From assembly GCA_053919585.1 (NCBI GenBank), contig CM132811.1: a stretch of 64,000 nucleotides of DNA. One strand, written 5' to 3'. This document shows, one piece after another, positions 2,084 to 63,134 of this stretch. The DNA comes from Euprymna scolopes. Taxonomy: Eukaryota. The position numbers and the translations under genes are program-made. The first letter of the stretch is position 1. Each line of letters opens with the position of its first letter. A model generated the notes under the pieces. That model was given only the letters and a program-made list of their open reading frames with translations, had not been told where the DNA came from and searched no databases.

Positions 2084-2100
2084 TATATATATATATGTGC

Positions 2101-2168
<68 letters not shown>
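2084..2168. repeat. (TA)n microsatellite
   Basis: Long TA run with one short gtgcg interruption. Confidence 0.97.
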
Positions 2169-7432: not shown

Positions 7433-7509
7433 TATACAATAGTAGAGCAAATATTAATACAAATAAATACGACAAACCTTAGAATGGCATCTAAAAAATG
7501 CTATCACAT

Positions 7510-7910: not shown

Positions 7911-8040
7911 CGCATCTATTCCCGAAAACTACCATTAAGTTATATATAATGCCATACGCACACAGATATGCTAAATGAACGTAGGAAAATGAACACACTC
8001 ATACATTTACTCACTTCTTTTTTTGCAAAGTGAAATTATC

Positions 8041-11000
8041 AGCGTCAAGTAAAAGCGTCAAATAAAAGCGTCAAATAATAGCGTCAAGTAAAAGCGTCAA
8101 ATAAATGCGTCAAGTAAAAGCGTCAAGTAAAAGCGTCAAATAAAAGCGTCCAGTAAAAGGGTCAAATAAAAGCGTCAAATAAAAGCATCAAATAAAAGCG
8201 TCAAATAAAAGCGTCAAGTAAAAGCGTCAAATAAAAGGGTCAAGTAAAAAGGTCGAGTAAAAGCGTCAAATAAAAGCGTCAAATAAAAGCGTCAAGTAAA
8301 AGCGTCAAATAAAAGCGTCAAATAAAAGCGTCAAATAAAAGCGTCAAATAAAAGTGTCAAATGAAAGCGTCAAATAAAAGCGTCAAACAAATGCGTCAAA
8401 TAAAAGCGTCAAGTAAAGGCGTCAAATAAAAGCGTCAAATAAAAGGGTCAAATAAGAGCGTAAAGTAAAAGCGTCAAGTAAAAGCGTCAAATAAATGCGT
8501 CAAGTAAAAGCGTCAAATAAAAGCGTCAAGTAAAAGGGTCAAGTAAAAGCGTCAAATAAAAGCGTCAAATAAAAGCGTCAAGTAAAAGCGTCAAATAAAA
8601 GCGTCAAATAAAAGCGTCAAATAAAAGCGTCAAATAAAAGGGTCAAGTAAAAAGGTCAAGTAAAAGCGTCAAATAAAAGCGTCAAATAAAAGCGTCAAAT
8701 AAAAGCGTTAAATAAAAGCGTCAAATAAAAGCGTCAAATAAAAGGGTCAAGTAAAAGCGTCAAATAAAAGCGTCAAATAAAAGCGTCAAATAAAAGCGTC
8801 AAATAATAACGTCAAATAAAAGCGTCAAATAAATGCGTCAAGTAAAAGCGTCAAGTAAAAGCGTCAAGTAAAAGCGTCAAATAAAAGCGTCAAATAATAA
8901 CGTCAAATAAAAGCGTCAAATAATAACGTCAAATGAAAGCGTCAAATAATAACGTCAAATAAAAGCGTCAAATAAAAGGGTCAAGTAAAAGCGTCAAATA
9001 AAAGCGTCAAATAAAAGCGTCAAATAATAACGTCAAGTAAAAGCGTCAAATAAAAGGGTCAAGTAAAAGCGTCAAGTAAAAGCGTCAAATAAAAGCGTCA
9101 AATAAAAGCGTCAAATAAAAGCGTCAAATAAAAGCGTCAAATAAAAGGGTCAAGTAAAAAGGTCAAGTAAAAGCGGCAAATAAAAGCGTCAAATAAAAGC
9201 GTCAAATAAAAGCGTCAAATAAAAGCGTCAAGTAAAAGGGTCAAGTAAAAGCGTCAAATAAGAGCGTCAAGTAAAAGCGTCAAGTAAAAGCGTCAAATAA
9301 AAGCGTCAAATGAAAGCGTCAAATAAAAGCGTCAAATAAAAGCGTCAAATAAAAGCGTCAAGTAAAGGCGTCAAATAAAAGCGTCAAATAAAAGGGTCAA
9401 ATAAAAGCGTCAAGTAAAAGCGTCAAATAAAAGCGTCAAATAAATGCGTCAAATAAAAGCGTCAAATGAAAGCGTCAAATAAAAGCGTCAAATAAAAGGG
9501 TCAAGTAAAAAGGTCAAGTAAAAGCGTCAAATAAAAGCGTCAAATAAAAGCGTCAAATAAAAGCGTCAAATAAAAGCGTCAAGTAAAAGCGTCAAATAAA
9601 AGCGTCAAATGAAAGCGTCAAATAAAAGCGTCAAATAAAAGCGTCAAATAAAAGCGTCAAGTAAAGGCGTCAAATAAAAGCGTCAAATAAAAGCGTCAAA
9701 TAAAAGCGTCAAATAAAAGCGCCAAATAAAAGCGTCAAGTAAAAGCGACAAATAAACGTGTCAAGTAAAAGCGTCAAGTAAAAGCGTCAAATAAACGCTT
9801 CAAATAAAAGCGTCAATTAAAAGCGTCAAGTAAAAGCGTCAAATAAAAGTGTCAAGTAAAAGCGTCAAGTAAAAGCGTCAAGTAAAAGCGTCAAATAAAA
9901 GCGTCAAATAAAAGCTTCAAATAAAAGCGTCAAATAAAAGCGTCAAATAAAAGCGTCAAATAAAAGCGTCAAATAAAAGGGTCAAATAAAAGCGTCAAAT
10001 AAAAGCGTCAAATAAAAGCGTCAAATAAAAGCGTCAAGTAAAAGCGTCAAGCAAAAGCGTCAAATAAAAGCGTCAAATAAAAGCGTCAAATAAAAGCGTC
10101 AAGTAAAGGCGTCAAATAAAAGCGTCAAATAAAAGCGTCAAGTAAAAGCGTCAAATAAAAGCGTCAAATAAAAGCGTCAAGTAAAAACGTAAAATAAAAG
10201 TGTCAAGTAAAAGTGTCAAGTAAAGGCGTCAAAAAGCGTCAAGTAAAAGCGTCAAATAAAAGCGTAAAATAAAAGCGTCAAGAAAAAGCGTCAAGTAAAA
10301 GCGTCAAATAAAAGCGTCAAATAAAAGCGTCCAATAAAAGTGTCAAGTTAAACCGTCAAGTAAAAGCGTCAAATATAAGCGTCAAGTAAAGGCGTCAAAT
10401 AAAAGCGTCAAATAAAAGCGTCAAATAAAAGCATCAAGTAAAAGGGTCAAGTAAAAGCGTCAAATAAAAGCGTCAAGTAAAGGCGTCAAATAAAAGCGTC
10501 AAATAAAAGCGTCAAGTAAAAGCGTCAAATAAAAGCGTCAAATAAAAGGGTCAAGTAAAAGGGTCATGTAAAAGCTTCAAATAAAAGGGTCAAGTAAAAG
10601 CGTCAAATAAAAGCGTCAAATAAAAGCGTCAAATAAAAGGGTCAAATAAAAGCGTCAAATAAAAGCGTCACATAAAAGCGTCAAATAAAAGCGTCAAATA
10701 AAAGCGTCAAGCAAAAGCGTCAAATAAAAGCGTCAAATAAAAGCGTCAAATAAAAGCGTCAAGTAAAGGCGTCAAATAAAAGCGTCAAATAAAAGCGTCA
10801 AGTAAAAGCGTCAAATAAAAGCGTCAAATAAAAGCGTCAAGTAAAAACGTAAAATAAAAGCGTCAAATAAAAGCGTCAAGTAAATGCGTCAAATAAAAGC
10901 GTAAAATAAAAGCGTCAAGAAAAAGCGTCAAGTAAAAGCGTCAAATAAAAGCGTCAAATAAAAGCGTCAAATAAAAGCGTCAAATGAAAGTGTCAAGTTA

Positions 11001-14000: not shown

Positions 14001-17000
14001 AAAAGGGTCAAGTAAAAAGGTCCAGTAAAAGCGTCAAATAAAAGGGTCAAGTAAAAAGGTCAAGTAAAAGCGTCAAATAAAAGCGTCAAGTAAAAGCGTC
14101 AAATAAAAGCGTCAAGTAAAAGCGCCAAATAAAAGCGTCAAGTAAAAGCGTCAAATAAAAGGGTCAAGTAAAAACGTCAAGTAAAAGCGTCAAATAAAAG
14201 CGTCAAATAAAAGCGTCAAATAAAAGCGTCAAGTAATAGGGCCAAATAAAAGCGTCAAATAAAAGCGTCAAGTAAAAGCGTCAAGAAAAAGCGTCAAATA
14301 AAAGCGTCAAATAAAAGCGTCAAGTAAAAGCGTCAAATAAAAGCGTCAAGTAAAAGCGTCAAATAAAAGCGTCAAGTAAAACGGTCGAGTAAAAGCGTCA
14401 AATAGAAGCGTCAAATAAAAGCGTCAAGTAAAAGGGTCAAGTAAAAGGGCCAAATAAAAGGGTCAAGTAAAATGGTAAAATAAAAATGTCAAATAAAAGC
14501 GTCAAATAAAAGCGTCAAGTAAAAGCGTCAAATAAAAGCGTCAAGTAAAAGCGTCAAGTAAAAGCGTCAAATAAAAGCGTCAAATAAAAGCGTCAAGCAA
14601 AAGGGTCAAGTAAAAGCGTCAAGTAAAAGCGTCAAATAAAAGCGTCAAATAAAAGCGTCAAGAAAAAGCGTCAAATAAAAGCGTCGAATAAAAGCGTCAA
14701 ATAAAAGCGTCAAATAAAAGCGTCAAGTAAAAGCGTCAAATAAAAGCGTCAAGTAAAAGCGTCAAGTAAAACCGTCAATTAAAAGCGTCAAATAAAAGCG
14801 TCAAGTAAAAGGGTCAAGTAAAAGCGTCAAGTAAAAGCGTCAAATGAAAGCGTCAAATAAAAGCGTCAAGAAAAAGCGTCAACTAAAAGGGTCAAGTAAA
14901 ACCGTCAAATAAAAGCGTCAAGTAAAAGCGTCAAATAAAAGCGTCAAGTAAAAGCGTCAAATAAAAGCGTCAAGTAAAAGCGTCAAATAAAAGCGTCAAG
15001 TAAAGGCGTCAAATAAAAGCGTCAAATAAAAGCGTCAAATAAAAGCGTCAAAACAAAGCGTCAAGTAAAAGCGTCAAATAAAAGCGTGAAGTAAAAGCGT
15101 CAAATAAAAGCGTCCAATAAAAGCGTCAAGTAAAGGCGTCAAATAAAAGCGTCAAATAAAAGCGTCAAGAAAAAGCGTCAAGTAAAAGCGTCAAATAAAA
15201 GCTTCAAATAAAAGCGTCAAATAAAAGCGTCAAGTAAAAGGGTCGAGTAAAAGCGTCAAATAAAAGCGACAAATAAAAGGGTCAAGTAAAAGGGTCAAGT
15301 AAAAGCGTCAAATAAAAGGGTCAAGTAAAAGGGTCAAAATAAGCGTCAAGTAAAAGCGTCAATAAAAGCGTGAAATAAAAGCGTCAAATAAAAGCGTCAA
15401 GTAAAAGGGGCAAGTAAAAGCGTCAAGTAAAAGCGTCACATAAAAGCGTCAAGTAAAAGCGTCAAATAAAAGGGTCAAATAAGAGCGTCAAGTAAAAGCG
15501 TCAAATAAAAGCGTCAAGAAAAAGTGTCAAATAAAAGCGTCAAGTAAAAGCGTCAAATAAAAGCGTCAAGTAAAAGCGTCAAATAAAAGCGTCAAGTAAA
15601 AGCGTCAAATAAAAGCGTCAAGTAAAAGCGTCAAGTAAAGGCGTCAAATAAAAGCGTCAAGTAAAACGGTCGAGTAAAAGCGTCAAATAAAAGCGTCAAA
15701 TAAAAGCGTCAAGTAAAAGGGTCAAGTAAAAGCGTCAAATAAAAGGGTCAAGAAAAAGGGTCAAATAAAAGCGTCAAATAAAAGCGTCAAATAAAAGCGT
15801 CAAGTAAAAGCGTCAAATAAAAGCGTCAAGTAAAAGCGTCAAATAAAAGCGTCAAATAAAAGCGTCAAATAAAAGCGTCAAGTAAAAGGGCCAAATAAAA
15901 GCGTCAAATAAAAGCGTCAAGTAAAAGCGTCAAATAAAAGCGTCAAATAAAAGCGTCAAATAAAAGCGTCAAGTAAAAGCGTCAAATAAAAGCGTCAAGT
16001 AAAAGCGTCAAATAAAAGCGTCAAGTAAAACGGTCGAGTAAAAGCGTCAAATAAAAGCGTCAAATAAAAGCGTCAAGTAAAACGGTCAAGTAAAAGCGTC
16101 AAATAAAAGGGTCAAGTAAAAGGGTAAAATAAAAGCGTCAAATAAAAGCGTCAAGTAAAAGCGTCAAATAAAAGCGTCAAGTAAAAGCGTCAAATAAAAG
16201 CGTCAAATAAAAGCGTCAAAACAAAGCGTCAAGTAAAAGCGTCAAATAAAAGCGTCAAGTAAAAGCGTCAAATAAAAGCGTCAAATAAAAGCCTCAAGTA
16301 AAGGCGTCAAATAAAAGCGTCAAATAAAAGCGTCAAGAAAAAGCGTCAAGTAAAAGCCTCAAATAAAAGCTTCAAATAAAAGCGTCAAATAAATGCGTCA
16401 AGTAAAAGGGTCGAGTAAAAGCGTCAAATAAAAGCGACAAATAAAAGGGTCAAGTAAAAGCGTCAAGTAAAAGCGTCAAATAAAAGCGTCAAGTAAAAGC
16501 GTCAAGTAAAGGCGTCAAATAAAAGCGTCAAATAAAAGCGTCAAATAAAAGCGTCAAAACAAAGCGTCAAGTAAAAGCGTCAAATAAAAGCGTCAAGTAA
16601 AAGCGTCAAATAAAAGCGTCAAATAAAAGCGTCAAGTAAAGGCGTCAAATAAAAGCGTCAAATAAAAGCGTCAAGAAAAAGCGTCAAGTAAAAGCGTCAA
16701 ATAAAAGCTTCAAATAAAAGCGTCAAATAAAAGCGTCAAGTAAAAGGGTCGAGTAAAAGCGTCAAATAAAAGCGACAAATAAAAGGGTCAAGTAAAAGGG
16801 TCAAGTAAAAGCGTCAAATAAAAGGGTCAAGTAAAAGGGTCAAATAAAAGCGTCAAGTAAAAGCGTCAAGTAAAAGCGTGAAATAAAAGCGTCAAATAAA
16901 AGCGTCAAGTAAAAGGGGCAAGTAAAAGCGTCAAGTAAAAGCGTCAAATAAAAGCGTCAAGTAAAAGCGTCAAATAAAAGGGTCAAATAAGAGCGTCAAG

Positions 17001-20000
17001 TAAAAGCGTCAAATATAAGCGTCAAGAAAAAGTGTCAAATAAAAGCGTCAAGTAAAAGCGTAAAATAAAAGCGTCAAGTAAAAGCGTCAAATAAAAGCGT
17101 CAAGTAAAAGCGTCAAATAAAGCGTCAAGTAAAAGCGTCAAATAAAAGCGTCAAGTAAAAGCGTCAAGTAAAAGCGTCAAATAAAAGCGTCAAGTAAAAA
17201 CGTAAAATAAAAGCGTCAAGTAAAAGTGTCAAGTAAAGGCGTCAAATAAAAGCGTCAAGTAAAAGCGTCAAATAAAAGCGTCAAATAAAAGCGTCAAATA
17301 AAGCGTCAAGTAAAGGCGTCAAATAAAAGCGTCAAGTAAAACGGTCGAGTAAAAGCGTCAAATAAAAGCGTCAAATAAAAGCGTCAAGTAAAAGGGTCAA
17401 TTAAAAGCGTCAAATAAAAGGGTCAAGTAAAAGATTAAAATAAAAGCGTCAAATAAAAGCGTCAAATAAAAGCGTCAAGTAAAAGCGTCAAATAAAAGCG
17501 TCAAGTAAAAGCGTCAAATAAAAGCGTCAAATAAAAGCGTCAAATAAAAGCGTCAAGTAAAAGGGCCAAATAAAAGCGTCAAATAAAAGCGTCAAGTAAA
17601 AGCGTCAAGAAAAAGCGTCAAATAAAAGCGTCAAATAAAAGCGTCAAGTAAAAGCGTCAAATAAAAGCGTCAAGTAAAAGCGTCAAATAAAAGCGTCAAG
17701 TAAAACGGTCGAGTAAAAGCGTCAAATAAAAGCGTCAAATAAAAGCGTCAAGTAAAAGGGTCAAGTAAAAGCGTCAAATAAAAGGGTCAAGTAAAAGGGT
17801 AAAATAAAAGCGTCAAATAAAAGCGTCAAATAAAAGCGTCAAGTAAAAGCGTCAAATAAAAGCGTCAAGTAAAAGCGTCAAATAAAAGCGTCAAATAAAA
17901 GCGTCAAATAAAAGCGTCAAAACAAAGCGTCAAGTAAAAGCGTCAAATAAAAGCGTCAAGTAAAAGCGTCAAATAAAAGCGTCAAATAAAAGCGTCAAGT
18001 AAAGGCGTCAAATAAAAGCGTCAAATAAAAGCGTCAAGAAAAAGCGTCAAGTAAAAGCGTCAAATAAAAGCTTCAAATAAAAGCGTCAAATAAAAGCGTC
18101 AAGTAAAAGGGTCGAGTAAAAGCGTCAAATAAAAGCGACAAATAAAAGGGTCAAGTAAAAGGGTCAAGTAAAAGCGTCAAATAAAAGGGTCAAGTAAAAG
18201 GGTCAAATAAAAGCGTCAAGTAAAAGCGTCAAGTAAAAGCGTGAAATAAAAGCGTCAAATAAAAGCGTCAAGTAAAAGGGGCAAGTAAAAGCGTCAAGTA
18301 AAAGCGTCAAGTAAAAGCGTCAAGTAAAAGCGTCAAGTAAAAGCGTCAAGTAAAGGCGTCAAATAAAAGCGTCAAATAAAAGCGTCAAACAAAAGCGTCA
18401 AATAAAAGCGTCAAGTAAAAGCGTCAAGTAAAAGCGTCAAAAAAAAGCGTCAAGTAAAAGCGTCAAATAAAAGCTTCAAATAAAAGCGTCAAATAAAAGC
18501 GTCAAGTAAAAGGGTCGAGTAAAAGCGTCAAATAAAAGCGTCAAATAAAAGGGTCAAGTAAAAGGGTCAAGTAAAAGCGTCAAATAAAATGGTCAAGTAA
18601 AAGGGTCAAATAAAAGCGTCAAATAAAAGCGTCAAATAAAAGGGTCAAGAAAACGCGTCAAATAAAAGCGTCAAGTAAAAGCGTCAAATAAAAGCGTCAA
18701 ATAAAAGCGTCAAATAAAAGGGTCAAGTAAAAAGGTCCAGTAAAAGCGTCAAATAAAAGGGTCAAGTAAAAAGGTCAAGTAAAAGCGTCAAATAAAAGCG
18801 TCAAGTAAAAGCGTCAAATAAAAGCGTCAAGTAAAAGCGCCAAATAAAAGCGTCAAGTAAAAGCGTCAAATAAAAGGGTCAAGTAAAAACGTCAAGTAAA
18901 AGCGTCAAATAAAAGCGTCAAATAAAAGCGTCAAGTAATAGGGCCAAATAAAAGCGTCAAATAAAAGCGTCAAGTAAAAGCGTCAAGAAAAAGCGTCAAA
19001 TAAAAGCGTCAAATAAAAGCGTCAAGTAAAAGCGTCAAATAAAAGCGTCAAGTAAAAGCGTCAAATAAAAGCGTCAAGTAAAACGGTCGAGTAAAAGCGT
19101 CAAATAAAAGCGTCAAATAAAAGCGTCAAGTAAAAGGGTCAAGTAAAAGCGTCAAATAAAAGGGTCAAGTAAAATGGTAAAATAAAAACGTCAAATAAAA
19201 GCGTCAAATAAAAGCGTCAAGTAAAAGCGTCAAATAAAAGCGTCAAGTAAAAGCGTCAAGTAAAAGCGTCAAATAAAAGCGTCAAATAAAAGCGTCAAGT
19301 AAAAAGGTCAAGTAAAAGCGTCAAGTAAAAGCGTCAAATAAAAGCGTCAAATAAAAGCGTCCAGAAAAAGCGTCAAATAAAAGCGTCGAATAAAAGCGTC
19401 AAATAAAAGCGTCAAGTAAAAGCGTCAAATAAAAGCGTCAAGTAAAAGCGTCAAGTAAAAGCGTCAAATAAAAGCGTCAAATAAAAGCGTCAAGTAAAAG
19501 GGTCAAGTAAAAGCGTCAAGTAAAAGCGTCAAATGAAAGCGTCAAATAAAAGCGTCAAGAAAAAGCGTCAACTAAAAGGGTCAAGTAAAACCGTCAAATA
19601 AAAGCGTCAAGTAAAAGCGTCAAATAAAAGCGTCAAGTAAAAGCGTCAAATAAAAGCGTCAAGTAAAAGCGTCAAATAAAAGCGTCAAGTAAAAGCGTCA
19701 AGTAAAGGCGTCAAATAAAAGCGTCAAATAAAAGCGTCAAATAAAAGCGTCAAAACAAAGCGTCAAGTAAAAGCGTCAAATAAAAGCGTGAAGTAAAAGC
19801 GTCAAATAAAAGCGTCAAATAAAAGCGTCAAGTAAAGGCGTCAAATAAAAGCGTCAAATAAAAGCGTCAAGAAAAAGCGTCAAGTAAAAGCGTCAAATAA
19901 AAGCTTCAAATAAAAGCGTCAAATAAAAGCTTCAAGTAAAAGGGTCGAGTAAAAGCGTCAAATAAAAGCGACAAATAAAAGGGTCAAGTAAAAGGGTCAA

Positions 20001-47000: not shown

Positions 47001-50000
47001 AATAAAAGCGTCAAGTAAAAGGGTCAAGTAAAAGCGTCAAATAAAAGGGTCAAGTAAAAGATTAAAATAAAAGCGTCAAATAAAAGCGTCAAATAAAAGC
47101 GTCAAGTAAAAGCGTCAAATAAAAGCGTCAAGTAAAAGCGTCAAATAAAAGCGTCAAATAAAAGCGTCAAGTAAAAGCGTCAAATAAAAGCGTCAAGTAA
47201 AACGGTCGAGTAAAAGCGTCAAATAAAAGCGTCAAATAAAAGCGTCAAGTAAAAGGGTCAAGTAAAAGCGTCAAATAAAAGGGTCACGTAAAATGGTAAA
47301 ATAAAAACGTCAAATAAAAGCGTCAAATAAAAGCGTCAAGTAAAAGCGTCAAATAAAAGCGTCAAGTAAAAGCGTCAAGTAAAAGCGTCAAATAAAAGCG
47401 TCAAATAAAAGCGTCAAGTAAAAGGGTCAAGTAAAAGCGTCAAGTAAAAGCGTCAAATAAAAGCGTCAAATAAAAGCGTCAAGAAAAAGCGTCAAATAAA
47501 AGCGTCGAATAAAAGCGTCAAATAAAAGCGTCAAATAAAAGCGTCAAGTAAAAGCGTCAAATAAAAGCGTCAAGTAAAAGCGTCAAGTAAAAGCGTCAAA
47601 TAAAAGCGTCAAATAAAAGCGTCAAGTAAAAGGGTCAAGTAAAAGCGTCAAGTAAAAGCGTCAAATGAAAGCGTCAAATAAAAGCGTCAAGAAAAAGCGT
47701 CAACTAAAAGGGTCAAGTAAAACCGTCAAATAAAAGCGTCAAGTAAAAGCGTCAAATAAAAGCGTCAAGTAAAAGCGTCAAATAAAAGCGTCAAGTAAAA
47801 GCGTCAAATAAAAGCGTCAAGTAAAAGCGTCAAGTAAAGGCGTCAAATAAAAGCGTCAAATAAAAGCGTCAAATAAAAGCGTCAAAACAAAGCGTCAAGT
47901 AAAAGCGTCAAATAAAAGCGTGAAGTAAAAGCGTCAAATAAAAGCGTCAAATAAAAGCGTCAAGTAAAGGCGTCAAATAAAAGCGTCAAATAAAAGCGTC
48001 AAGAAAAAGCGTCAAGTAAAAGCGTCAAATAAAAGCTTCAAATAAAAGCGTCAAATAAAAGCGTCAAGTAAAAGGGTCGAGTAAAAGCGTCAAATAAAAG
48101 CGACAAATAAAAGGGTCAAGTAAAAGGGTCAAGTAAAAGCGTCAAATAAAAGGGTCAAGTAAAAGGGTCAAATAAAAGCGTCAAGTAAAAGCGTCAAGTA
48201 AAAGCGTGAAATAAAAGCGTCAAATAAAAGCGTCAAGTAAAAGGGGCAAGTAAAAGCGTCAAGTAAAAGCGTCACATAAAAGCGTCAAGTAAAAGCGTCA
48301 AATAAAAGGGTCAAATAAGAGCGTCAAGTAAAAGCGTCAAATAAAAGCGTCAAGAAAAAGTGTCAAATAAAAGCGTCAAGTAAAAGCGTCAAATAAAAGC
48401 GTCAAGTAAAAGCGTCAAATAAAAGCGTCAAGTAAAAGCGTCAAATAAAAGCGTCAAGTAAAAGCGTCAAGTAAAGGCGTCAAATAAAAGCGTCAAGTAA
48501 AACGGTCGAGTAAAAGCGTCAAATAAAAGCGTCAAACAAAAGCGTCAAGTAAAAGGGTCAAGTAAAAGCGTCAAATAAAAGGGTCAAGTAAAAGGGTCAA
48601 ATAAAAGCGTCAAATAAAAGCGTCAAATAAAAGCGTCAAGTAAAAGCGTCAAATAAAAGCGTCAAGTAAAAGCGTCAAATAAAAGCGTCAAATAAAAGCG
48701 TCAAATAAAAGCGTCAAGTAAAAGGGCCAAATAAAAGCGTCAAATAAAAGCGTCAAGTAAAAGCGTCAAGAAAAAGCGTCAAATAAAAGCGTCAAATAAA
48801 AGCGTCAAGTAAAAGCGTCAAATAAAAGCGTCAAGTAAAAGCGTCAAATAAAAGCGTCAAGTAAAACGGTCGAGTAAAAGCGTCAAATAAAAGCGTCAAA
48901 TAAAAGCGTCAAGTAAAACGGTCAAGTAAAAGCGTCAAATAAAAGGGTCAAGTAAAAGGGTAAAATAAAAGCGTCAAATAAAAGCGTCAAGTAAAAGCGT
49001 CAAGTAAAAGCGTCAAATAAAAGCGTCAAGTAAAAACGTAAAATAAAAGCGTCAAGTAAAAGTGTCAAGTAAAGGCGTCAAATAAAAGCGTCAAGTAAAA
49101 GCGTCAAATAAAAGCGTCAAATAAAAGCGTCAAATAAAGCGTCAAGTAAAGGCGTCAAATAAAAGCGTCAAGTAAAACGGTCGAGTAAAAGCGTCAAATA
49201 AAAGCGTCAAATAAAAGCGTCAAGTAAAAGGGTCAAGTAAAAGCGTCAAATAAAAGGGTCAAGTAAAAGATTAAAATAAAAGCGTCAAATAAAAGCGTCA
49301 AATAAAAGCGTCAAGTAAAAGCGTCAAATAAAAGCGTCAAGTAAAAGCGTCAAATAAAAGCGTCAAATAAAAGCGTCAAGTAAAAGCGTCAAATAAAAGC
49401 GTCAAGTAAAACGGTCGAGTAAAAGCGTCAAATAAAAGCGTCAAATAAAAGCGTCAAGTAAAAGGGTCAAGTAAAAGCGTCAAATAAAAGGGTCAAGTAA
49501 AATGGTAAAATAAAAACGTCAAATAAAAGCGTCAAATAAAAGCGTCAAGTAAAAGCGTCAAATAAAAGCGTCAAGTAAAAGCGTCAAGTAAAAGCGTCAA
49601 ATAAAAGCGTCAAATAAAAGCGTCAAGTAAAAGGGTCAAGTAAAAGCGTCAAGTAAAAGCGTCAAATAAAAACGTCAAATAAAAGCGTCAAGAAAAAGCG
49701 TCAAATAAAAGCGTCGAATAAAAGCGTCAAATAAAAGCGTCAAATAAAAGCGTCAAGTAAAAGCGTCAAATAAAAGCGTCAAGTAAAAGCGTCAAGTAAA
49801 AGCGTCAAATAAAAGCGTCATATAAAAGCGTCAAGTAAAAGGGTCAAGTAAAAGCGTCAAGTAAAAGCGTCAAATGAAAGCGTCAAATAAAAGCGTCAAG
49901 AAAAAGCGTCAACTAAAAGGGTCAAGTAAAACCGTCAAATAAAAGCGTCAAGTAAAAGCGTCAAATAAAAGCGTCAAGTAAAAGCGTCAAATAAAAGCGT

Positions 50001-53000
50001 CAAGTAAAAGCGTCAAATAAAAGCGTCAAGTAAAAGCGTCAAGTAAAGGCGTCAAATAAAAGCGTCAAATAAAAGCGTCAAATAAAAGCGTCAAAACAAA
50101 GCGTCAAGTAAAAGCGTCAAATAAAAGCGTCAAGTAAAAGCGTGAAATAAAAGCGTCAAATAAAAGCGTCAAGTAAAAGGGGCAAGTAAAAAGGTCAAGT
50201 AAAAGCGTCACATAAAAGCGTCAAGTAAAAGCGTCAAATAAAAGGGTCAAATAAGAGCGTCAAGTAAAAGCGTCAAATAAAAGCGTCAAGAAAAAGTGTC
50301 AAATAAAAGCGTCAAGTAAAAGCGTCAAATAAAAGCGTCAAGTAAAAGCGTCAAATAAAAGCGTCAAGTAAAAGCGTCAAATAAAAGCGTCAAGTAAAAG
50401 CGTCAAGTAAAGGCGTCAAATAAAAGCGTCAAGTAAAACGGTCGAGTAAAAGCGTCAAATAAAAGCGTCAAATAAAAGCGTCAAGTAAAAGGGTCAAGTA
50501 AAAGCGTCAAATAAAAGGGTCAAGTAAAAGGGTCAAATAAAAGCGTCAAATAAAAGCGTCAAATAAAAGCGTCAAGTAAAAGCGTCAAATAAAAGCGTCA
50601 AGTAAAAGCGTCAAATAAAAGCGTCAAATAAAAGCGTCAAATAAAAGCGTCAAGTAAAAGGGCCAAATAAAAGCGTCAAATAAAAGCGTCAAGTAAAAGC
50701 GTCAAGAAAAAGCGTCAAATAAAAGCGTCAAATAAAAGCGTCAAGTAAAAGCGTCAAATAAAAGCGTCAAGTAAAAGCGTCAAATAAAAGCGTCAAGTAA
50801 AACGGTCGAGTAAAAGCGTCAAATAAAAGCGTCAAATAAAAGCGTCAAGTAAAACGGTCAAGTAAAAGCGTCAAATAAAAGGGTCAAGTAAAAGGGTAAA
50901 ATAAAAGCGTCAAATAAAAGCGTCAAATAAAAGCGTCAAGTAAAAGCGTCAAATAAAAGCGTCAAGTAAAAGCGTCAAATAAAAGCGTCAAATAAAAGCG
51001 TCAAATAAAAGCGTCAAAACAAAGCGTCAAGTAAAAGCGTCAAATAAAAGCGTCAAGTAAAAGCGTCAAATAAAAGCGTCAAATAAAAGCCCTAAGTAAA
51101 GGCGTCAAATAAAAGCGTCAAATAAAAGCGTCAAGAAAAAGCGTCAAGTAAAAGCGTCAAATAAAAGCTTCAAATAAAAGCGTCAAATAAATGCGTCAAG
51201 TAAAAGGGTCGAGTAAAAGCGTCAAATAAAAGCGACAAATAAAAGGGTCAAGTAAAAGCGTCAAGTAAAAGCGTCAAATAAAAGCGTCAAGTAAAAGCGT
51301 CAAGTAAAGGCGTCAAATAAAAGCGTCAAATAAAAGCGTCAAATAAAAGCGTCAAAACAAAGCGTCAAGTAAAAGCGTCAAATAAAAGCGTCAAGTAAAA
51401 GCGTCAAATAAATGCGTCAAATAAAAGCGTCAAGTAAAGGCGTCAAATAAAAGCGTCAAAAAAAAGCGTCAAGAAAAAGCGTCAAGTAAAAGCGTCAAAT
51501 AAAAGCTTCAAATAAAAGCGTCAAATAAAAGCGTCAAGTAAAAGGGTCGAGTAAAAGCGTCAAATAAAAGCGACAAATAAAAGGGTCAAGTAAAAGGGTC
51601 AAGTAAAAGCGTCAAATAAAAGGGTCAAGTAAAAGGGTCAAATAAAAGCGTCAAGTAAAAGCGTCAAGTAAAAGCGTGAAATAAAAGCGTCAAATAAAAG
51701 CGTCAAGTAAAAGGGGCAAGTAAAAGCGTCAAGTAAAAGCGTCAAATAAAAGCGTCAAGTAAAAGCGTCAAATAAAAGGGTCAAATAAGAGCGTCAAGTA
51801 AAAGCGTCAAATAAAAGCGTCAAGAAAAAGTGTCAAATAAAAGCGTCAAGTAAAAGCGTAAAATAAAAGCGTCAAGTAAAAGCGTCAAATAAAAGCGTCA
51901 AGTAAAAGCGTCAAATAAAGCGTCAAGTAAAAGCGTCAAATAAAAGCGTCAAGTAAAGGCGTCAAATAAAAGCGTCAAGTAAAACGGTCGAGTAAAAGCG
52001 TCAAATAAAAGCGTCAAATAAAAGCGTCAAGTAAAAGGGTCAAGTAAAAGCGTCAAATAAAAGGGTCAAGTAAAAGATTAAAATAAAAGCGTCAAATAAA
52101 AGCGTCAAATAAAAGCGTCAAGTAAAAGCGTCAAATAAAAGCGTCAAGTAAAAGCGTCAAATAAAAGCGTCAAATAAAAGCGTCAAATAAAAGCGTCAAG
52201 TAAAAGGGCCAAATAAAAGCGTCAAATAAAAGCGTCAAGTAAAAGCGTCAAGAAAAAGCGTCAAATAAAAGCGTCAAATAAAAGCGTCAAGTAAAAGCGT
52301 CAAATAAAAGCGTCAAGTAAAAGCGTCAAATAAAAGCGTCAAGTAAAACGGTCGAGTAAAAGCGTCAAATAAAAGCGTCAAATAAAAGCGTCAAGTAAAA
52401 GGGTCAAGTAAAAGCGTCAAATAAAAGGGTCAAGTAAAAGGGTAAAATAAAAGCGTCAAATAAAAGCGTCAAATAAAAGCGTCAAGTAAAAGCGTCAAAT
52501 AAAAGCGTCAAGTAAAAGCGTCAAATAAAAGCGTCAAATAAAAGCGTCAAATAAAAGAGTCCAAACAAAGCGTCAAGTAAAAGCGTCAAATAAAAGCGTC
52601 AAGTAAAAGCGTCAAATAAAAGCGTCAAATAAAAGCGTCAAGTAAAGGCGTCAAATAAAAGCGTCAAATAAAAGCGTCAAGAAAAAGCGTCAAGTAAAAG
52701 CGTCAAATAAAAGCTTCAAATAAAAGCGTCAAATAAAAGCGTCAAGTAAAAGGGTCGAGTAAAAGCGTCAAATAAAAGCCACAAATAAAAGGGTCAAGTA
52801 AAAGGGTCAAGTAAAAGCGTCAAATAAAAGGGTCAAGTAAAAGGGTCAAATAAAAGCGTCAAGTAAAAGCGTCAAGTAAAAGCGTGAAATAAAAGCGTCA
52901 AATAAAAGCGTCAAGTAAAAGGGGCAAGTAAAAGCGTCAAGTAAAAGCGTCAAGTAAAAGCGTCAAGTAAAGGCGTCAAATAAAAGCGTCAAATAAAAGC

Positions 53001-56000
53001 GTCAAACAAAAGCGTCAAATAAAAGCGTCAAGTAAAAGCGTCAAGTAAAAGCGTCAAATAAAAGCGTCAAGTAAAAGCGTCAAGTAAAAGCGTCAAATAA
53101 AAGCGTCAAATAAAAGCGTCAAGTAAAAGGGTCAAGAAAAAGCGTCAAGTAAAAGCGTCAAATGAAAGCGTCAAATAAAAGCGTCAAGAAAAAGCGTCAA
53201 CTAAAAGGGTCAAGTAAAACCGTCAAATAAAAGCGTCAAGTAAAAGCGTCAAATAAAAGCGTCAAGTAAAAGCGTCAAATAAAAGCGTCAAGTAAAAGCG
53301 TCAAATAAAAGCGTCAAGTAAAAGCGTCAAGTAAAGGCGTCAAATAAAAGCGTCAAATAAAAGCGTCAAATAAAAGCGTCAAAACAAAGCGTCAAGTAAA
53401 AGCGTCAAATAAAAGCGTCAAGTAAAAGCGTCAAATAAAAGCGTCAAATAAAAGCGTCAAGTAAAGGCGTCAAACAAAAGCGTCAAATAAAAGCGTCAAG
53501 AAAAAGCGTCAAGTAAAAGCGTCAAATAAAAGCTTCAAATAAAAGCGTCAAATAAAAGCGTCAAGTAAAAGGGTCGAGTAAAAGCGTCAAATAAAAGCGA
53601 CAAATAAAAGGGTCAAGTAAAAGGGTCAAGTAAAAGCGTCAAATAAAAGGGTCAAGTAAAAGGGTCAAATAAAAGCGTCAAGTAAAAGCGTCAAGTAAAA
53701 GCGTGAAATAAAAGCGTAAAATAAAAGCGTCAAGTAAAAGGGGCAAGTAAAAGCGTCAAGTAAAAGCGACACATAAAAGCGTCAAGTAAAAGCGTCAAAT
53801 AAAAGGGTCAAATAAGAGCGTCAAGTAAAAGCGTCAAATAAAAGCGTCAAATAAAAGCGTCAAATAAAAGCGTCAAGTAAAAGGGCCAAATAAAAGCGTC
53901 AAGTAAAAGCGTCAAGAAAAAGCGTCAAGTAAAAGCGTCAAATAAAAGCGTCAAGAAAAAGTGTCAAATAAAAGCGTCAAGTAAAAGCGTAAAATAAAAG
54001 CGTCAAGTAAAAGCGTCAAATAAAAGCGTCAAGTAAAAGCGTCAAATAAAGCGTCAAGTAAAAGCGTCAAATAAAAGCGTCAAGTAAAGGCGTCAAATAA
54101 AAGCGTCAAGTAAAACGGTCGAGTAAAAGCGTCAAATAAAAGCGTCAAATAAAAGCGTCAAGTAAAAGGGTCAAGTAAAAGCGTCAAATAAAAGGGTCAA
54201 GTAAAAGATTAAAATAAAAGCGTCAAATAAAAGCGTCAAATAAAAGCGTCAAGTAAAAGCGTCAAATAAAAGCGTCAAGTAAAAGCGTCAAATAAAAGCG
54301 TCAAATAAAAGCGTCAAATAAAAGCGTCAAGTAAAAGGGCCAAATAAAAGCGTCAAATAAAAGCGTCAAGTAAAAGCGTCAAGAAAAAGCGTCAAATAAA
54401 AGCGTCAAATAAAAGCGTCAAGTAAAAGCGTCAAATAAAAGCGTCAAGTAAAAGCGTCAAATAAAAGCGTCAAGTAAAACGGTCGAGTAAAAGCGTCAAA
54501 TAAAAGCGTCAAATAAAAGCGTCAAGTAAAAGGGTCAAGTAAAAGCGTCAAATAAAAGGGTCAAGTAAAAGGGTAAAATAAAAGCGTCAAATAAAAGCGT
54601 CAAATAAAAGCGTCAAGTAAAAGCGTCAAATAAAAGCGTCAAGTAAAAGCGTCAAATAAAAGCGTCAAATAAAAGCGTCAAATAAAAGAGTCAAAACAAA
54701 GCGTCAAGTAAAAGCGTCAAATAAAAGCGTCAAGTAAAAGCGTCAAATAAAAGCGTCAAATAAAAGCGTCAAGTAAAGGCGTCAAATAAAAGCGTCAAAT
54801 AAAAGCGTCAAGAAAAAGCGTCAAGTAAAAGCGTCAAATAAAAGCTTCAAATAAAAGCGTCAAATAAAAGCGTCAAGTTAAAGGGTCGAGTAAAAGCGTC
54901 AAATAAAAGCCACAAATAAAAGGGTCAAGTAAAAGGGTCAAGTAAAAGCGTCAAATAAAAGGGTCAAGTAAAAGGGTCAAATAAAAGCGTCAAGTAAAAG
55001 CGTCAAGTAAAAGCGTGAAATAAAAGCGTCAAATAAAAGCGTCAAGTAAAAGGGGCAAGTAAAAGCGTCAAGTAAAAGCGTCAAGTAAAAGCGTCAAGTA
55101 AAAGCGTCAAGTAAAGGCGTCAAATAAAAGCGTCAAATAAAAGCGTCAAACAAAAGCGTCAAATAAAAGCGTCAAGTAAAAGCGTCAAGTAAAAGCGTCA
55201 AATAAAAGCGTCAAGTAAAAGCGTCAAGTAAAAGCGTCAAATAAAAGCGTCAAATAAAAGCGTCAAGTAAAAGGGTCAAGAAAAAGCGTCAAGTAAAAGC
55301 GTCAAATGAAAGCGTCAAATAAAAGCGTCAAGAAAAAGCGTCAACTAAAAGGGTCAAGTAAAACCGTCAAATAAAAGCGTCAAGTAAAAGCGTCAAATAA
55401 AAGCGTCAAGTAAAAGCGTCAAATAAAAGCGTCAAGTAAAAGCGTCAAATAAAAGCGTCAAGTAAAAGCGTCAAGTAAAGGCGTCAAATAAAAGCGTCAA
55501 ATAAAAGCGTCAAATAAAAGCGTCAAAACAAAGCGTCAAGTAAAAGCGTCAAATAAAAGCGTCAAGTAAAAGCGTCAAATAAAAGCGTCAAATAAAAGCG
55601 TCAAGTAAAGGCGTCAAATAAAAGCGTCAAATAAAAGCGTCAAGAAAAAGCGTCAAGTAAAAGCGTCAAATAAAAGCTTCAAATAAAAGCGTCAAATAAA
55701 AGCGTCAAGTAAAAGGGTCGAGTAAAAGCGTCAAATAAAAGCGACAAATAAAAGGGTCAAGTAAAAGGGTCAAGTAAAAGCGTCAAATAAAAGGGTCAAG
55801 TAAAAGGGTCAAATAAAAGCGTCAAGTAAAAGCGTCAAGTAAAAGCGTGAAATAAAAGCGTAAAATAAAAGCGTCAAGTAAAAGGGGCAAGTAAAAGCGT
55901 CAAGTAAAAGCGACACATAAAAGCGTCAAGTAAAAGCGTCAAATAAAAGGGTCAAATAAGAGCGTCAAGTAAAAGCGTCAAATAAAAGCGTCAAATAAAA

Positions 56001-59000
56001 GCGTCAAATAAAAGCGTCAAGTAAAAGGGCCAAATAAAAGCGTCAAGTAAAAGCGTCAAGAAAAAGCGTCAAATAAAAGCGTCAAATAAAAGCGTCAAGT
56101 AAAAGCGTCAAATAAAAGCGTCAAGTAAAAGCGTCAAATAAAAGCGTCAAGTAAAACGGTCGAGTAAAAGCGTCAAATAAAAGCGTCAAATAAAAGCGTC
56201 AAGTAAAACGGTCAAGTAGAAGCGTCAAATAAAAGGGTCAAGTAAAAGGGTAAAATAAAAGCGTCAAATAAAAGCGTCAAATAAAAGCGTCAAGTAAAAG
56301 CGTCAAATAAAAGCGTCAAATAAAAGCGTCAAATAAAAGCGTCAAATAAAAGCGTCAAATAAAAGCGTCAAAACAAAGCGTCAAGTAAAAGGGTCAAGTA
56401 AAAGCGTCAAGTAAAAGCGTCAAATAAAAGCGTCAAATAAAAGCGTCAAGAAAAAGTGTCAAATAAAAGCGTCGAATAAAAGCGTCAAATAAAAGCGTCA
56501 AATAAAAGCGTCAAGTAAAAGCGTCAAATAAAAGCGTCAAGTAAAAGCGTCAAGTAAAAGCGTCAAATAAAAGCGTCAAATAAAAGCGTCAAGTAAAAGG
56601 GTCAAGAAAAAGCGTCAAGTAAAAGCGTCAAATGAAAGCGTCAAATAAAAGCGTCAAGAAAAAGCGTCAACTAAAAGGGTCAAGTAAAACCGTCAAATAA
56701 AAGCGTCAAGTAAAAGCGTCAAATAAAAGCGTCAAGTAAAAGCGTCAAATAAAAGCGTCAAGTAAAAGCGTCAAATAAAAGCGTCAAGTAAAAGCGTCAA
56801 GTAAAGGCGTCAAATAAAAGCGTCAAATAAAAGCGTCAAATAAAAGCGTCAAAACAAAGCGTCAAGTAAAAGCGTCAAATAAAAGCGTCAAGTAAAAGCG
56901 TCAAATAAAAGCGTCAAATAAAAGCGTCAAGTAAAGGCGTCAAATAAAAGCGTCAAATAAAAGCGTCAAGAAAAAGCGTCAAGTAAATGCGTCAAATAAA
57001 AGCTTCAAATAAAAGCGTCCAATAAAAGCGTCAAGTAAAAGGATCGAGTAAAAGCGTCAAATAAAAGCGACAAATAAAAGGGTCAAGTAAAAGGGTCAAG
57101 TAAAAGCGTCAAATAAAAGGGTCAAGTAAAAGGGTAAAATAAAAGCGTCAAGTAAAAGCGTCAAGTAAAAGCGTCAAGTAAAAGCGTGAAATAAAAGCGT
57201 CAAATAAAAGCGTCAAGTAAAAGGGGCAAGTAAAAGCGTCAAGTAAAAGCGTCACATAAAAGCGTCAAGTAAAAGCGTCAAATAAAAGGGTCAAATAAGA
57301 GCGTCAAGTAAAAGCGTCAAATAAAAGCGTCAAATAAAAGCGTCAAATAAAAGCGTCAAGTAAAAGGGCCAAATAAAAGCGTCAAATAAAAGCGTCAAGT
57401 AAAAGCGTCAAGAAAAAGCGTCAAATAAAAGCGTCAAATAAAAGCGTCAAGTAAAAGCGTCAAATAAAAGCGTCAAGTAAAAGCGTCAAATAAAAGCGTC
57501 AAGTAAAACGGTCGAGTAAAAGCGTCAAATAAAAGCGTCAAATAAAAGCGTCAAGTAAAACGGTCAAGTAAAAGCGTCATATAAAAGGGTCAAGTAAAAT
57601 GGTAAAATAAAAGCGTCAAATAAAAGCGTCAAATAAAAGCGTCAAGTAAAAGCGTCAAATAAAAGCGTCAAGTAAAAGCGTCAAATAAAAGCGTCAAATA
57701 AAAGCGTCAAATAAAAGCGTCAAATAAAAGCGTCAAAACAAAGCGTCAAGTAAAAGCGTCAAATAAAAGCGTCAAGTAAAAGCGTCAAATAAAAGCGTCA
57801 AATAAAAGCCTCAAGTAAAGGCGTCAAATAAAAGCGTCAAATAAAAGCGTCAAGAAAAGGCGTCAAGTAAAAGCGTCAAATAAAAGCTTCAAATAAAAGC
57901 GTCAAATAAATGCGTCAAGTAAAAGGGTCGAGTAAAAGCGTCAAATAAAAGCGACAAATAAAAGGGTCAAGTAAAAGCGTCAAGTAAAAGCGTCAAATAA
58001 AAGCGTCAAGTAAAAGCGTCAAGTAAAGGCGTCAAATAAAAGCGTCAAATAAAAGCGTCAAATAAAAGCGTCAAAACAAAGCGTCAAATAAAAGCGTCAA
58101 ATAAAAGCGTCAAGTAAAAGCGTCAAATAAAAGCGTCAAATAAAAGCGTCAAGTAAAGGCGTCAAATAAAAGCGTCAAAACAAAGCGTCAAGAAAAAGCG
58201 TCAAGTAAAAGCGTCAAATAAAAGCTTCAAATAAAAGCGTCAAATAAAAGCGTCAAGTAAAAGGGTCGAGTAAAAGCGTCAAATAAAAGCGACAAATAAA
58301 AGGGTCAAGTAAAAGGGTCAAGTAAAAGCGTCAAATAAAAGGGTCAAGTAAAAGGGTCAAATAAAAGCGTCAAGTAAAAGCGTCAAGTAAAAGCGTGAAA
58401 TAAAAGCGTCAAGAAAAAGTGTCAAATAAAAGTGTCAAATAAAAGCGTCAAGAAAAAGTGTCAAATAAAAGTGTCAAATAAAAGCGTCAAGTAAAAGCGT
58501 CAAATAAAAGCGTCAAATAAAAGCGTCAAATAAAAGCGTCAAGTAAAAGCGTCAAATAAAGCGTCAAGTAAAAGCGTCAAGTAAAGGCGTCAAATAAAAG
58601 CGTCAAGTAAAACGGTCGAGTAAAAGCGTCAAATAAAAGCGTCAAATAAAAGCGTCAAGTAAAAGGGTCAAGTAAAAGCGTCAAATAAAAGGGTCAAGTA
58701 AAAGGGTAAAATAAAAGCGTCAAATAAAAGCGTCAAATAAAAGCGTCAAGTAAAAGCGTCAAATAAAAGCGTCAAGTAAAAGCGTCAAATAAAAGCGTCA
58801 AATAAAAGCGTCAAATAAAAGCGTCAAGTAAAAGGGCCAAATAAAAGCGTCAAATAAAAGCGTCAAGTAAAAGCGTCAAGAAAAAGCGTCAAATAAAAGC
58901 GTCAAATAAAAGCGTCAAGTAAAAGCGTCAAATAAAAGCGTCAAGTAAAAGCGTCAAATAAAAGCGTCAAGTAAAACGGTCGAGTAAAAGCGTCAAATAA

Positions 59001-60940
59001 AAGCGTCAAATAAAAGCGTCAAGTAAAAGGGTCAAGTAAAAGCGTCAAATAAAAGGGTCAAGTAAAAGGGTAAAATAAAAGCGTCAAATAAAAGCGTCAA
59101 ATAAAAGCGTCAAGTAAAAGCGTCAAATAAAAGCGTCAAGTAAAAGCGTCAAATAAAAGCGTCAAATAAAAGCGTTAAATAAAAGCGTCAAAACAAAGCG
59201 TCAAGTAAAAGCGTCAAATAAAAGCGTCAAGTAAAAGCGTCAAATAAAAGCGTCAAATAAAAGCGTCAAGTAAAGGCGTCAAATGAAAGCGTCAAATAAA
59301 AGCGTCAAGAAAAAGCGTCAAGTAAAAGCGTCAAATAAAAGCTTCAAATAAAAGCGTCAAATAAAAGCGTCAAGTAAAAGGGTCGAGTAAAAGCGTCAAA
59401 TAAAAGCGACAAATAAAAGGGTCAAGTAAAAGGGTCAAGTAAAAGCGTCAAATAAAAGGGTCAAGTAAAAGGGTCAAATAAAAGCGTCAAGTAAAAGCGT
59501 CAAGTAAAAGCGTGAAATAAAAGCGTGAAATAAAAGCGTCAAGTAAAAGGGGCAAGTAAAAGCGTCAAGTAAAAGCGTCAAGTAAAAGCGTCAAGTAAAG
59601 GCGTCAAATAAAAGCGTCAAATAAAAGCGTCAAACAAAAGCGTCAAATAAAAGCGTCAATAAAAGCGTCAAGTAAAAGCGTCAAGTAAAAGTGTCAAGTA
59701 AAAGCGTCAAGTAAAGGCGTCAAATAAAAGCGTCAAATAAAAGGGTCAAATAAAAGCGTCAAATAAAAGCGTCAAGTAAAAGCGTCAAATAAAAGCGTCA
59801 AATAAAAGCGTCAAGTAAAGGCGTCAAATAAAAGCGTCAAATAAAAGCGTCAAGAAAAAGCGTCAAGTAAAAGCGTCAAATAAAAGCTTCAAATAAAAGC
59901 GTCAAATAAAAGCGTCAAGTAAAAGGGTCGAGTAAAAGCGTAAAATAAAAGCGTCAAATAAAAGGGTCAAGTAAAAGGGTCAAGTAAAAGCGTCAAATAA
60001 AAGGGTCAAGTAAAAGGGTCAAATAAAAACGTCAAATAAAAGCGTCAAATAAAAGCGTCAAGAAAAAGCGTCAAATAAAAGCGTCAAATAAAAGCGTCAA
60101 ATAAAAGGGTCAAGTAAAAAGGTCAAGTAAAAGCGTCAAATAAAGGGGTCAAGTAAAAAGGTCAAGTAAAAGCGTCAAATAAAAGCGTCAAGAAAAAGCG
60201 TCAAATAAAAGCGTCAAATAAAAGCGTCAAATAAAAGGGTCAAGTAAAAAGGTCAAGTAAAAGCGTCAAATAAAAGGGTCAAGTAAAAAGGTCAAGTAAA
60301 AGCGTCAAATAAAAGCGTCAAGTAAAAGCGTCAAATAAAAGCGTCAAGTAAAAGCGTCAAATAAAAGCGTCAAGTAAATATGTCAAATAAAAGCGTCAAA
60401 TAAAAGCGTCAAATAAAAGCGTATAATAAAAGCGTCAAATAAAAGGGTCAAGTAAAAAGGTCAAGTAAAAGCGTCAAATAAAAGCGTCAAGTAAAAGCGT
60501 CATATAAAAGCGTCAAGAAAAAGCGTCAAATAAATGGGTCAAGTAAAAGCGTCAAATAAAAGCGTCAAATAAAAGCGTCAAATAAAAGCGTCAAGAAAAA
60601 GCGTCAAATAAAAGGGTCAAGTAAAAGCGTCAAATAAAAGCGTCAAATAAAAGCGTCAAATAAAAGCGTCAAGTAAAAGCGTCAAATAAAAGCGTCAAGT
60701 AAAAGCGTCAAGTAAAAACGTCAAGTAAAAGCGTCAAATAAAAGCGTCAAATAAAAGCGTCAAATAAAAGCGTCAAGTAAAAGCGTCAAATAAAAGCGTC
60801 AAGTAAAAGCGTCAAGAAAAAGCGTCAAATAAAAGCGTCAAGTAAAAGCGTCAAATAAAAGCGTCAAGTAAAAGCGTCAAATAAAAGCGTCAAATAAAAG
60901 CGTCAAGTAAAATGGTCAAGTAAAAGCGTCAAGAAAAAGG
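8041..60940 (+). repeat. Satellite DNA array, 13-bp monomer TAAAAGCGTCAA(A/G), ~52.9 kb, ~4,070 head-to-tail copies with higher-order structure
   Basis: Continuous 13-bp periodicity from agcgtcaagt at 8041 to aagaaaaagg at ~60940, in a single orientation, with no insertions or N gaps seen. One position is A/G dimorphic. Rare variants recur in conserved order (GGGTC, GCTTC, GGTCGA, GCGAC, GGGGC, GGGCC, AACT). Confidence 0.99.
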
Positions 60941-63066: not shown

Positions 63067-63134
63067 TAGTAGATAATAAACACAGCGTATAGACGATAAT
63101 AAATATATAGTTCAAATATCTGCAGCGTTTTTAG

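What the first reader, a model, noticed from the sequence alone, without database searches (positions are those of the whole stretch)
8041..60940. Fully spanned 53-kb satellite of a 13-bp monomer with unique flanks on both sides
Seen: about 4,070 same-orientation monomers, sharp boundaries and no visible TE insertion, although both flanks are dense in TE debris. Indels are rare and tend to recur at homologous positions. I do not recognise the monomer as a described satellite. Inference: the array is young or actively homogenised, and is a candidate centromeric, pericentromeric or heterochromatin-nucleating locus.
Basis: partly seen in the sequence, partly recalled or inferred. Interest (0 to 1): 0.7.

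Follow-up and report, generated by a model that had tools for sequence, protein, structure and literature searches.

The report
Single-locus 53-kb array of 13-bp repeats
This is a real, uninterrupted 53-kb run of about 4,070 copies of a 13-base unit found at only one place in a 5.9-Gb animal (probably mollusc) genome; it reads as an overgrown local minisatellite that recently grew by copying kilobase blocks of itself, and nothing marks it as a centromere.

Summary
Window 8041-60940 is one head-to-tail array of about 4,070 units of TAAAAGCGTCAAR. All units face the same way, no insertion is longer than 1 base, the boundaries are sharp, and unique DNA abuts both ends.

The array is private. Every match to a two-unit pattern (1,769) and to a 31-mer with up to 3 mismatches (3,351) in the 5.9-Gb assembly lies inside this window. 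It sits 88% of the way along a 115.7-Mb chromosome-scale piece.

There is no regular higher-order repeat. Instead, 86% of the array consists of blocks of 300 bases or more that recur at about 99.8% identity at irregular distances. The largest is about 6.5 kb, copied 10,928 bases away. The recurrent indels are one single-base loss carried along by these block copies. The first 2 kb and last 0.9 kb have no near-identical partners, which is the classic pattern of old edges around a young core.

"Young or homogenised" is supported. The centromere or heterochromatin idea has no support and some evidence against it, but it remains untested by experiment.

The surrounding 200 kb holds many unrelated private arrays. 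Earlier follow-ups in this scan reported the same kind of single-locus 25-86-kb arrays elsewhere in this genome. This one is an ordinary new member of a known kind. Read laying failed, so expression and length polymorphism are untested.

The parts
8041..60940 (+). Whole tandem array. It has about 4,070 units of TAAAAGCGTCAAR (A at the last place in 55% of units, G in 45%), 34.5% G+C, one CpG per consensus unit, 112 distinct unit variants, and no open frame above 51 aa.
8041..10040 (+). Left edge zone. It has no near-identical partner block anywhere in the array, the most private unit variants (11 per 154 units), and more A-type units (69%). This is the older, un-homogenised edge.
16041..56040 (+). 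Young core. In each 2-kb bin, 81-100% of bases lie in blocks of 300 bases or more that recur at 99% identity or better, usually 4-12 times over. The lags are irregular, clustering near 2.1-2.5, 5.1-5.8 and 10.9 kb, with no fixed higher-order period.
34933..41395 (+). First copy of the largest internal duplication (about 6.5 kb).
   Evidence: lag 10,928; sub-blocks of 2,447, 1,500 and 2,242 bases with 1, 0 and 2 mismatches
45861..52323 (+). Second copy of the largest internal duplication.
60041..60940 (+). Right edge zone. It has no near-identical partner block. Units that start with A instead of T are enriched here (5 of the 68 units in this bin are AAAAAGCGTCAAA), and the terminal partial unit AAAAAGG also starts that way.
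7816..8040 (.). Left abutting DNA with no other match in the genome.
   Evidence: matches elsewhere cover only 7456-7815
60941..61010 (.). Right abutting DNA with no other match in the genome.
   Evidence: matches elsewhere start at 61011

Best explanation
This is a private, non-coding, hyper-expanded minisatellite. A 13-bp unit arose once in unique intergenic DNA and grew in place to about 53 kb.

Shown:
- It is one array at one locus, in one orientation, with no foreign insertion.
- The core is a mosaic of blocks of 0.3-6.5 kb, copied at irregular distances and still about 99.8% identical.
- The edges carry private variants and have no partner blocks.
- The recurrent single-base deletion is a passenger of the block copies.

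Inferred:
- The seed was a slippage duplication.
- Growth and homogenisation came from out-of-register exchange between sister chromatids or homologues, or from misaligned break repair. These act less often at array ends.
- The last rounds are recent.
- The array most likely has no function of its own. It may be packed as heterochromatin as a consequence of being repetitive, not as its purpose.
For: Single locus. Genome-wide counts equal the in-window counts exactly: 1,769 against 1,769 and 3,351 against 3,351. An 18-mer with 1 mismatch finds only 7 isolated sites elsewhere, against 3 for the reversed control pattern.

Structure.

Block mosaic. There are 158 block pairs of 500 bases or more, with 304 mismatches in 124,888 bases. 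Coverage is 86%, falling to 0% in the first 2 kb and the last 0.9 kb. No single period dominates.

No coding capacity or strand structure. The longest open frame is 51 aa. Both strands fold worse than shuffled sequence.

Context. At least 17 unrelated arrays of 300 bases or more, with units mostly of 22-51 bp and lengths up to 14.6 kb, lie within +-100 kb, along with LINE fragments. Earlier follow-ups report similar private 25-86-kb arrays in this genome.
Against: - Nothing tests function directly.
- The exact length and block order rest on a single assembly, and near-identical kilobase blocks are what assemblers find hard.
- No empty or proto-repeat site was found to show the seed step.
- 53 kb is beyond the usual minisatellite range.
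- Several RNA-labelled runs hold 5-20% of the words of the junction stretch, so transcription is not excluded.
Confidence: 0.8

Rival explanations
1. It is a chromosome-specific centromere or pericentromere core. On this reading the array recruits CENP-A, or nucleates flanking heterochromatin, on this one chromosome.
For: The array is long, homogeneous and free of transposons, with a young core and older edges, a pattern also seen at centromeres. The neighbourhood is rich in tandem repeats and LINE fragments, and no host gene was seen among the long open frames. I found no paper on cephalopod or mollusc centromere sequences, so there is nothing to contradict it.
Against: The unit is absent from every other chromosome-scale piece. 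The array is only 53 kb on a 115.7-Mb piece and lies at 88% of its length. There is no regular higher-order repeat. Many private arrays of similar or greater size are reported in this genome, more than a one-per-chromosome role needs. The 13-bp unit bears no relation to nucleosome length.
Confidence: 0.07
2. It is an assembly artefact. On this reading a much shorter 13-bp repeat was inflated or scrambled by the assembler.
For: The core consists of near-identical kilobase blocks, which are difficult to order. No reads could be laid.
Against: The array is spanned without N between two unique flanks. It has coherent, distinct left and right edge zones and ordered marker variants. Other runs hold words of the junction stretch, though which part they hold is unknown. 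Even if the length were wrong, a large private array would remain.
Confidence: 0.06
3. It is a functional array of binding sites or a transcribed repeat. About 3,200 CGTCA (cAMP response element, CRE, half-site) motifs would act as a factor sink or enhancer-like block, or the array would be a source of long or small RNA.
For: CGTCA occurs 3,196 times and GGGTCA 351 times. The array keeps 3,547 CpG, with CpG observed/expected of 2.3 against 0.77-0.87 in the flanks. RNA-labelled runs hold 5-20% of the junction words.
Against: A 5-base motif in a 13-base unit is expected by chance. There is no full palindromic CRE (0 copies of TGACGTCA). The locus is private and young, so no conservation supports a role. 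The labels of most of those RNA runs are marked as guesses and the matching part is unknown. An earlier follow-up on another motif-bearing array in this genome also found no sign of function.
Confidence: 0.05

Closest known systems
Minisatellites / VNTR loci (10-100-bp units at a single locus with unique flanks)
   Same: The unit is 13 bp. There is one locus with unique flanking DNA, interspersed unit variants, and growth by out-of-register exchange.
   Different: At 53 kb and about 4,070 units it is well beyond the usual 0.1-30 kb. It is A+T-rich (34.5% G+C), unlike the G+C-rich human hypervariable type. Length polymorphism is not tested.
Short-unit classical satellites (own knowledge: Drosophila 5-12-bp satellites such as the dodeca satellite and Prodsat; the kangaroo rat 10-bp HS-beta)
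   Same: It is a very short unit in a long, uninterrupted, one-orientation array with strong strand asymmetry. It is homogenised and non-coding.
   Different: Those satellites make up percents of a genome, sit on several chromosomes, and span hundreds of kilobases to megabases. This one is 0.0009% of the genome at a single site.
Other private 25-86-kb arrays noted by this scan in the same genome (units of 29, 38, 43, 51, 73-93 bp)
   Same: All are single-locus, have ordinary DNA on both sides, show recent block copying, and were each judged not to be marked as a centromere.
   Different: This one has the shortest unit of the set seen in the notes. The unit sequences are unrelated. No source sequence (gene, transposon or older repeat) is visible at its edges.
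Centromeric satellites with higher-order repeats (e.g. primate alpha satellite)
   Same: A young homogenised core is flanked by more diverged edge units.
   Different: There is no fixed higher-order period and the unit is not of nucleosome scale. It is not shared between chromosomes and is tens of kilobases long, not megabases.

Membership tests
Satellite DNA (classical sense) | Head-to-tail tandem units in one orientation forming a long non-coding array | tested here: met
   (0 reverse matches)
Satellite DNA (classical sense) | High genomic abundance, usually at several loci or chromosomes | tested here: not met
   All genome-wide matches lie in this window. The array is 52.9 kb of 5.9 Gb.
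Satellite DNA (classical sense) | Constitutive heterochromatin (H3K9me3, late replication, C-band) | not testable with these tools
   No chromatin data are available.
Minisatellite / VNTR | Unit of about 10-100 bp | tested here: met
   The unit is 13 bp.
Minisatellite / VNTR | Single locus with unique flanks | tested here: met
Minisatellite / VNTR | Array length usually below about 30 kb | tested here: not met
   The array is 52.9 kb, so it is a hyper-expanded case.
Minisatellite / VNTR | Length polymorphism between individuals | not testable with these tools
The listed runs are kept only as contigs.
Centromeric satellite | Bound by CENP-A / site of the kinetochore | not testable with these tools
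   No ChIP, CUT&RUN or cytology is available.
Centromeric satellite | The same or a related unit at the centromeres of other chromosomes (usual, not universal) | tested here: not met
Centromeric satellite | Regular higher-order repeat organisation (usual in homogenised centromere cores) | tested here: not met
   No dominant lag was found, only an irregular block mosaic.
Telomeric / subtelomeric repeat | Position at a chromosome end | tested here: not met
   The array lies 13.6 Mb from the nearer end of a 115,744,181-bp piece.
Catalogued satellite families | Unit matches a published or database consensus | tested here: inconclusive
   No repeat paper prints the unit; all 46 hits are primers or oligos. 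Repbase and Dfam are not on hand.

The most novel reading that the evidence does not exclude
This array and its many private 25-90-kb siblings could be products of a lineage-specific process. Either the genome's replication or repair machinery turns short local repeats into tens-of-kilobase arrays unusually often, or one such private array per chromosome serves as a chromosome-specific centromere in a group whose centromeres have never been sequenced.
Probability: 0.06. Interest if true: 0.6.

Novelty: new member of a known kind. Interest (0 to 1): 0.2.

Why it matters
Taken alone it matters little. It is a clean, fully spanned example of how a short local repeat grows into a satellite-sized array by copying blocks of itself, with old edges and a young core.

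It has two practical uses. It could serve as a single-locus cytogenetic marker, since a monomer oligo should paint one chromosome pair. It is also a likely hypervariable locus for population work.

The broader point is genome-level. This large mollusc genome seems to hold many such private arrays. A census of them would show whether that is unusual and whether any class of them coincides with centromeres.

Tried and rejected
1. Regular higher-order repeat: none. Unit-level autocorrelation shows only one clear peak, at 841 units, caused by a single duplication. TRF's periods of 39 and 52 reflect only a weak tendency of A-type and G-type units to alternate.

2. Source of the unit. No degenerate units lie beyond the boundaries. 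No related sequence occurs elsewhere in the genome. There is no paralogous empty site, because the abutting DNA is unique. The neighbouring arrays have unrelated units.

3. Hairpin or other strand structure as a driver: rejected, since both strands fold worse than shuffles.

4. Coding or peptide-repeat reading: rejected, since the longest frame is 51 aa.

5. Rfam found nothing in the array, only 5S-like hits in the right flank.

Expression, junction support and copy number in other individuals therefore remain untested. The runs are coded and kept as contigs, and I cannot say which part of the stretch they hold.

I therefore cannot say whether the neighbourhood is richer in arrays than the rest of the genome.

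8. The taxon was not verified. 'Mollusc / probably cephalopod' comes from earlier notes and from 'mollusc metagenome' labels among weak holders.
Full report
**What is there**

Window 8041-60940 is one tandem array. Tandem Repeats Finder gives a single array at 8041-60939, with a score of 79,971 and 0% indels, reported at periods of 39 and 52, both multiples of 13. Self-identity is 88.6% at a lag of 13 bases, against 20-38% at lags 1-12.

A wrap-around alignment to TAAAAGCGTCAAA parses 4,072 units, including a partial unit at each end. It needs only 2 single-base insertions and 28 deleted columns, so nothing foreign longer than one base interrupts 52.9 kb.

There are 112 distinct unit variants. 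TAAAAGCGTCAAA (39%) and TAAAAGCGTCAAG (27.5%) dominate, followed by TAAAAGGGTCAAG (6.6%). The A-type and G-type units tend to alternate: P(G after A) is 0.55 and P(G after G) is 0.32. They form no fixed dimer.

All matches are on one strand. The array is 34.5% G+C and strongly strand-asymmetric, with an AT skew of about 0.54. It has no open frame above 51 aa. It shows no tendency to fold as a single strand: both strands fold worse than shuffles.

The N runs of the window all lie in the flanks and were left alone.

**Boundaries and flanks**

The boundaries are sharp. Within about 10 bases of each end, the match to the unit falls to the background level of the flanks (sequence).

- The 225 bases abutting on the left (7816-8040) have no other match in the genome.
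- The 70 bases abutting on the right (60941-61010) have no other match in the genome.
- Further out on the left lies an ~810-bp dispersed repeat at 6545-7355, about 82% identical to its copies, with at least 19,000 first-look candidates.
- On the right lies a MITE-like pair of 61-nt inverted arms at 61333-61393 and 61695-61755. The arm occurs at 91-96% identity in many places, among about 1,000 first-look candidates.
- Also on the right is a ~245-bp SINE-like repeat at 62820-63068, with at least 17,000 candidates. It overlaps a 5S rRNA match.

**One locus only**

The window is C29:102,114,001-102,178,000 of a 5.9-Gb assembly of 925 pieces. C29 is 115,744,181 bases long. The array therefore lies at 88% of its length, 13.6 Mb from the nearer end.

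- A two-unit pattern has 1,769 matches in the whole genome, and the window alone has exactly 1,769.
- A 31-mer with up to 3 mismatches has 3,351 matches in the genome and 3,351 in the window.
- An 18-mer with one mismatch finds just 7 isolated sites on other pieces, against 3 for the reversed control pattern. That is chance level.
- A three-unit pattern is absent from the metagenome and prokaryote genome collections.
- No paper in the held library prints the unit as a repeat. All hits are primers or oligos.

The tool warns that its repeat counts are lower bounds, and unassembled DNA cannot be seen. Even so, the exact equality of the counts makes a second assembled locus very unlikely.

**Internal history**

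There is no regular higher-order repeat. The only clear unit-level autocorrelation peak is at 841 units. Instead the core is a mosaic.

- 158 block pairs of 500 bases or more recur, with 304 mismatches in 124,888 compared bases, or 99.76% identity. These blocks were selected for likeness, so the figure is biased upward.
- The lags are irregular, clustering near 2.1-2.5, 5.1-5.8 and 10.9 kb.
- The largest event copies about 6.5 kb, from 34933-41395 to 45861-52323.
- Blocks of 300 bases or more with a near-identical partner cover 86% of the array.
- Coverage is 81-100% in each 2-kb bin from 16 to 56 kb, 61-75% between 10 and 16 kb, and zero in the first 2 kb and the last 0.9 kb.
- The edge bins also carry the most private variants.

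Some 19-20 of the 28 deleted columns are the same loss of one A (unit T-AAAGCGTCAAG). Its repeated spacings of 233 and 10,928 bases are those of the block copies.

**Mechanism (inference from established models of tandem-repeat evolution)**

A young, repeatedly re-duplicated core, older edges and irregular block sizes are what out-of-register exchange or misaligned break repair within an array produces. A rolling-circle origin would more likely leave one fixed period.

The absence of any transposon in 53 kb, next to flanks full of families with tens of thousands of copies, fits recent growth or continual turnover.

The CpG in each unit is largely intact. At the C, 58 of 4,072 units have T. At the G, 5 have A. 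This also fits youth or a lack of germline methylation, but the counts are not independent, because variants are copied in blocks.

**Function**

Nothing points to one. The centromere idea has the following against it:

- The locus is private.
- It is small, at 0.05% of the piece.
- It has no fixed higher-order repeat.
- Private arrays of similar or larger size are common in this genome.

On that last point, earlier follow-ups in this scan report single-locus arrays of 24.5, 25.6, 53, 60, 64 and 86 kb with other units, each judged unmarked as a centromere. Those are AI notes that I did not re-test.

My own look at +-100 kb found at least 17 unrelated arrays of 300 bases or more. Most have units of 22-51 bp, and the longest spans 14.6 kb. 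Tandem repeats make up 34% of the left 100 kb and 17% of the right 100 kb. LINE reverse-transcriptase and endonuclease fragments are present, and no host gene appeared among the long open frames. Short exons would be missed by that check, so an intronic location is not excluded. I could not fetch control regions.

I found no literature on mollusc or cephalopod centromere sequences to compare with. A chromosome-specific centromere therefore stays possible at low odds.

The unit contains a CRE half-site (CGTCA, 3,196 copies) but no full site. That is what chance allows for a 5-mer.

**What could not be done**

The run search lists one DNA run of the same coded organism holding 42% of the sampled words of the junction stretch. 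It also lists several runs labelled as possible RNA, holding 5-20%, and runs of four other coded organisms holding 9-14%. Without laying them I cannot say whether they hold the flank, its dispersed repeats or the array.

Assembly correctness, expression and length polymorphism are therefore open. The taxon (mollusc, probably cephalopod) is taken from earlier notes and run labels and is not verified here.

**Verdict**

The 'young/homogenised' inference is supported and refined: growth was by block duplication, with old edges. The centromere or heterochromatin inference is unsupported.

The array is best filed as a hyper-expanded private minisatellite: a new, uncatalogued unit of a known kind, and one of many such arrays in this genome. 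Interest is low for the locus itself. The genome-wide abundance of such arrays is the more interesting question.

Noticed in passing
window 62820-63068 and 63189-63287: An ~245-bp SINE-like dispersed repeat, with copies about 90% identical and at least 17,000 first-look candidates genome-wide. It overlaps an Rfam 5S_rRNA match at 62951-63066 (-, 64.9 bits). A second, weaker 5S match lies at 63189-63287 (-, 39.6 bits). It is probably a 5S-derived SINE family.
   Followed up: partly
window 61333-61755: A MITE-like element with 61-nt inverted arms (92% complementary) 301 nt apart. The arm sequence recurs at 91-96% identity in many places across the genome (about 1,000 first-look candidates).
   Followed up: partly
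window 6545-7355: An ~810-bp dispersed repeat, about 82% identical to its copies, with at least 19,000 first-look candidates. It is an old, very abundant family next to the array.
   Followed up: partly
C29:102,014,001-102,278,000 (loci L017-L036): Many unrelated private tandem arrays lie within +-100 kb. Examples: 32-bp x458 (14.6 kb, L019-L020), 43-bp x146 at 97% (6.3 kb, L020-L021), 51-bp (7.0 kb, L025-L026), 22-bp x84 (L027), 25-bp x168 (4.2 kb, L018:5166-9366) and 26-bp x69 (L030). Tandem repeats make up 34% and 17% of the two 100-kb flanks. No control region could be fetched.
   Followed up: partly
L028:7714-9999 (-), L036:2824-3882 (-), L029:4884-5621 (+): LINE fragments, with Pfam RVT_1 and endonuclease-reverse transcriptase domains, lie 18-20 kb, 25-26 kb and 93-94 kb to the right of the array.
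   Followed up: no
window 2084-2167; L017, L018: Perfect or near-perfect (TA)n tracts of 25-42 units recur every few kilobases in the flanks, with at least seven in about 30 kb.
   Followed up: no
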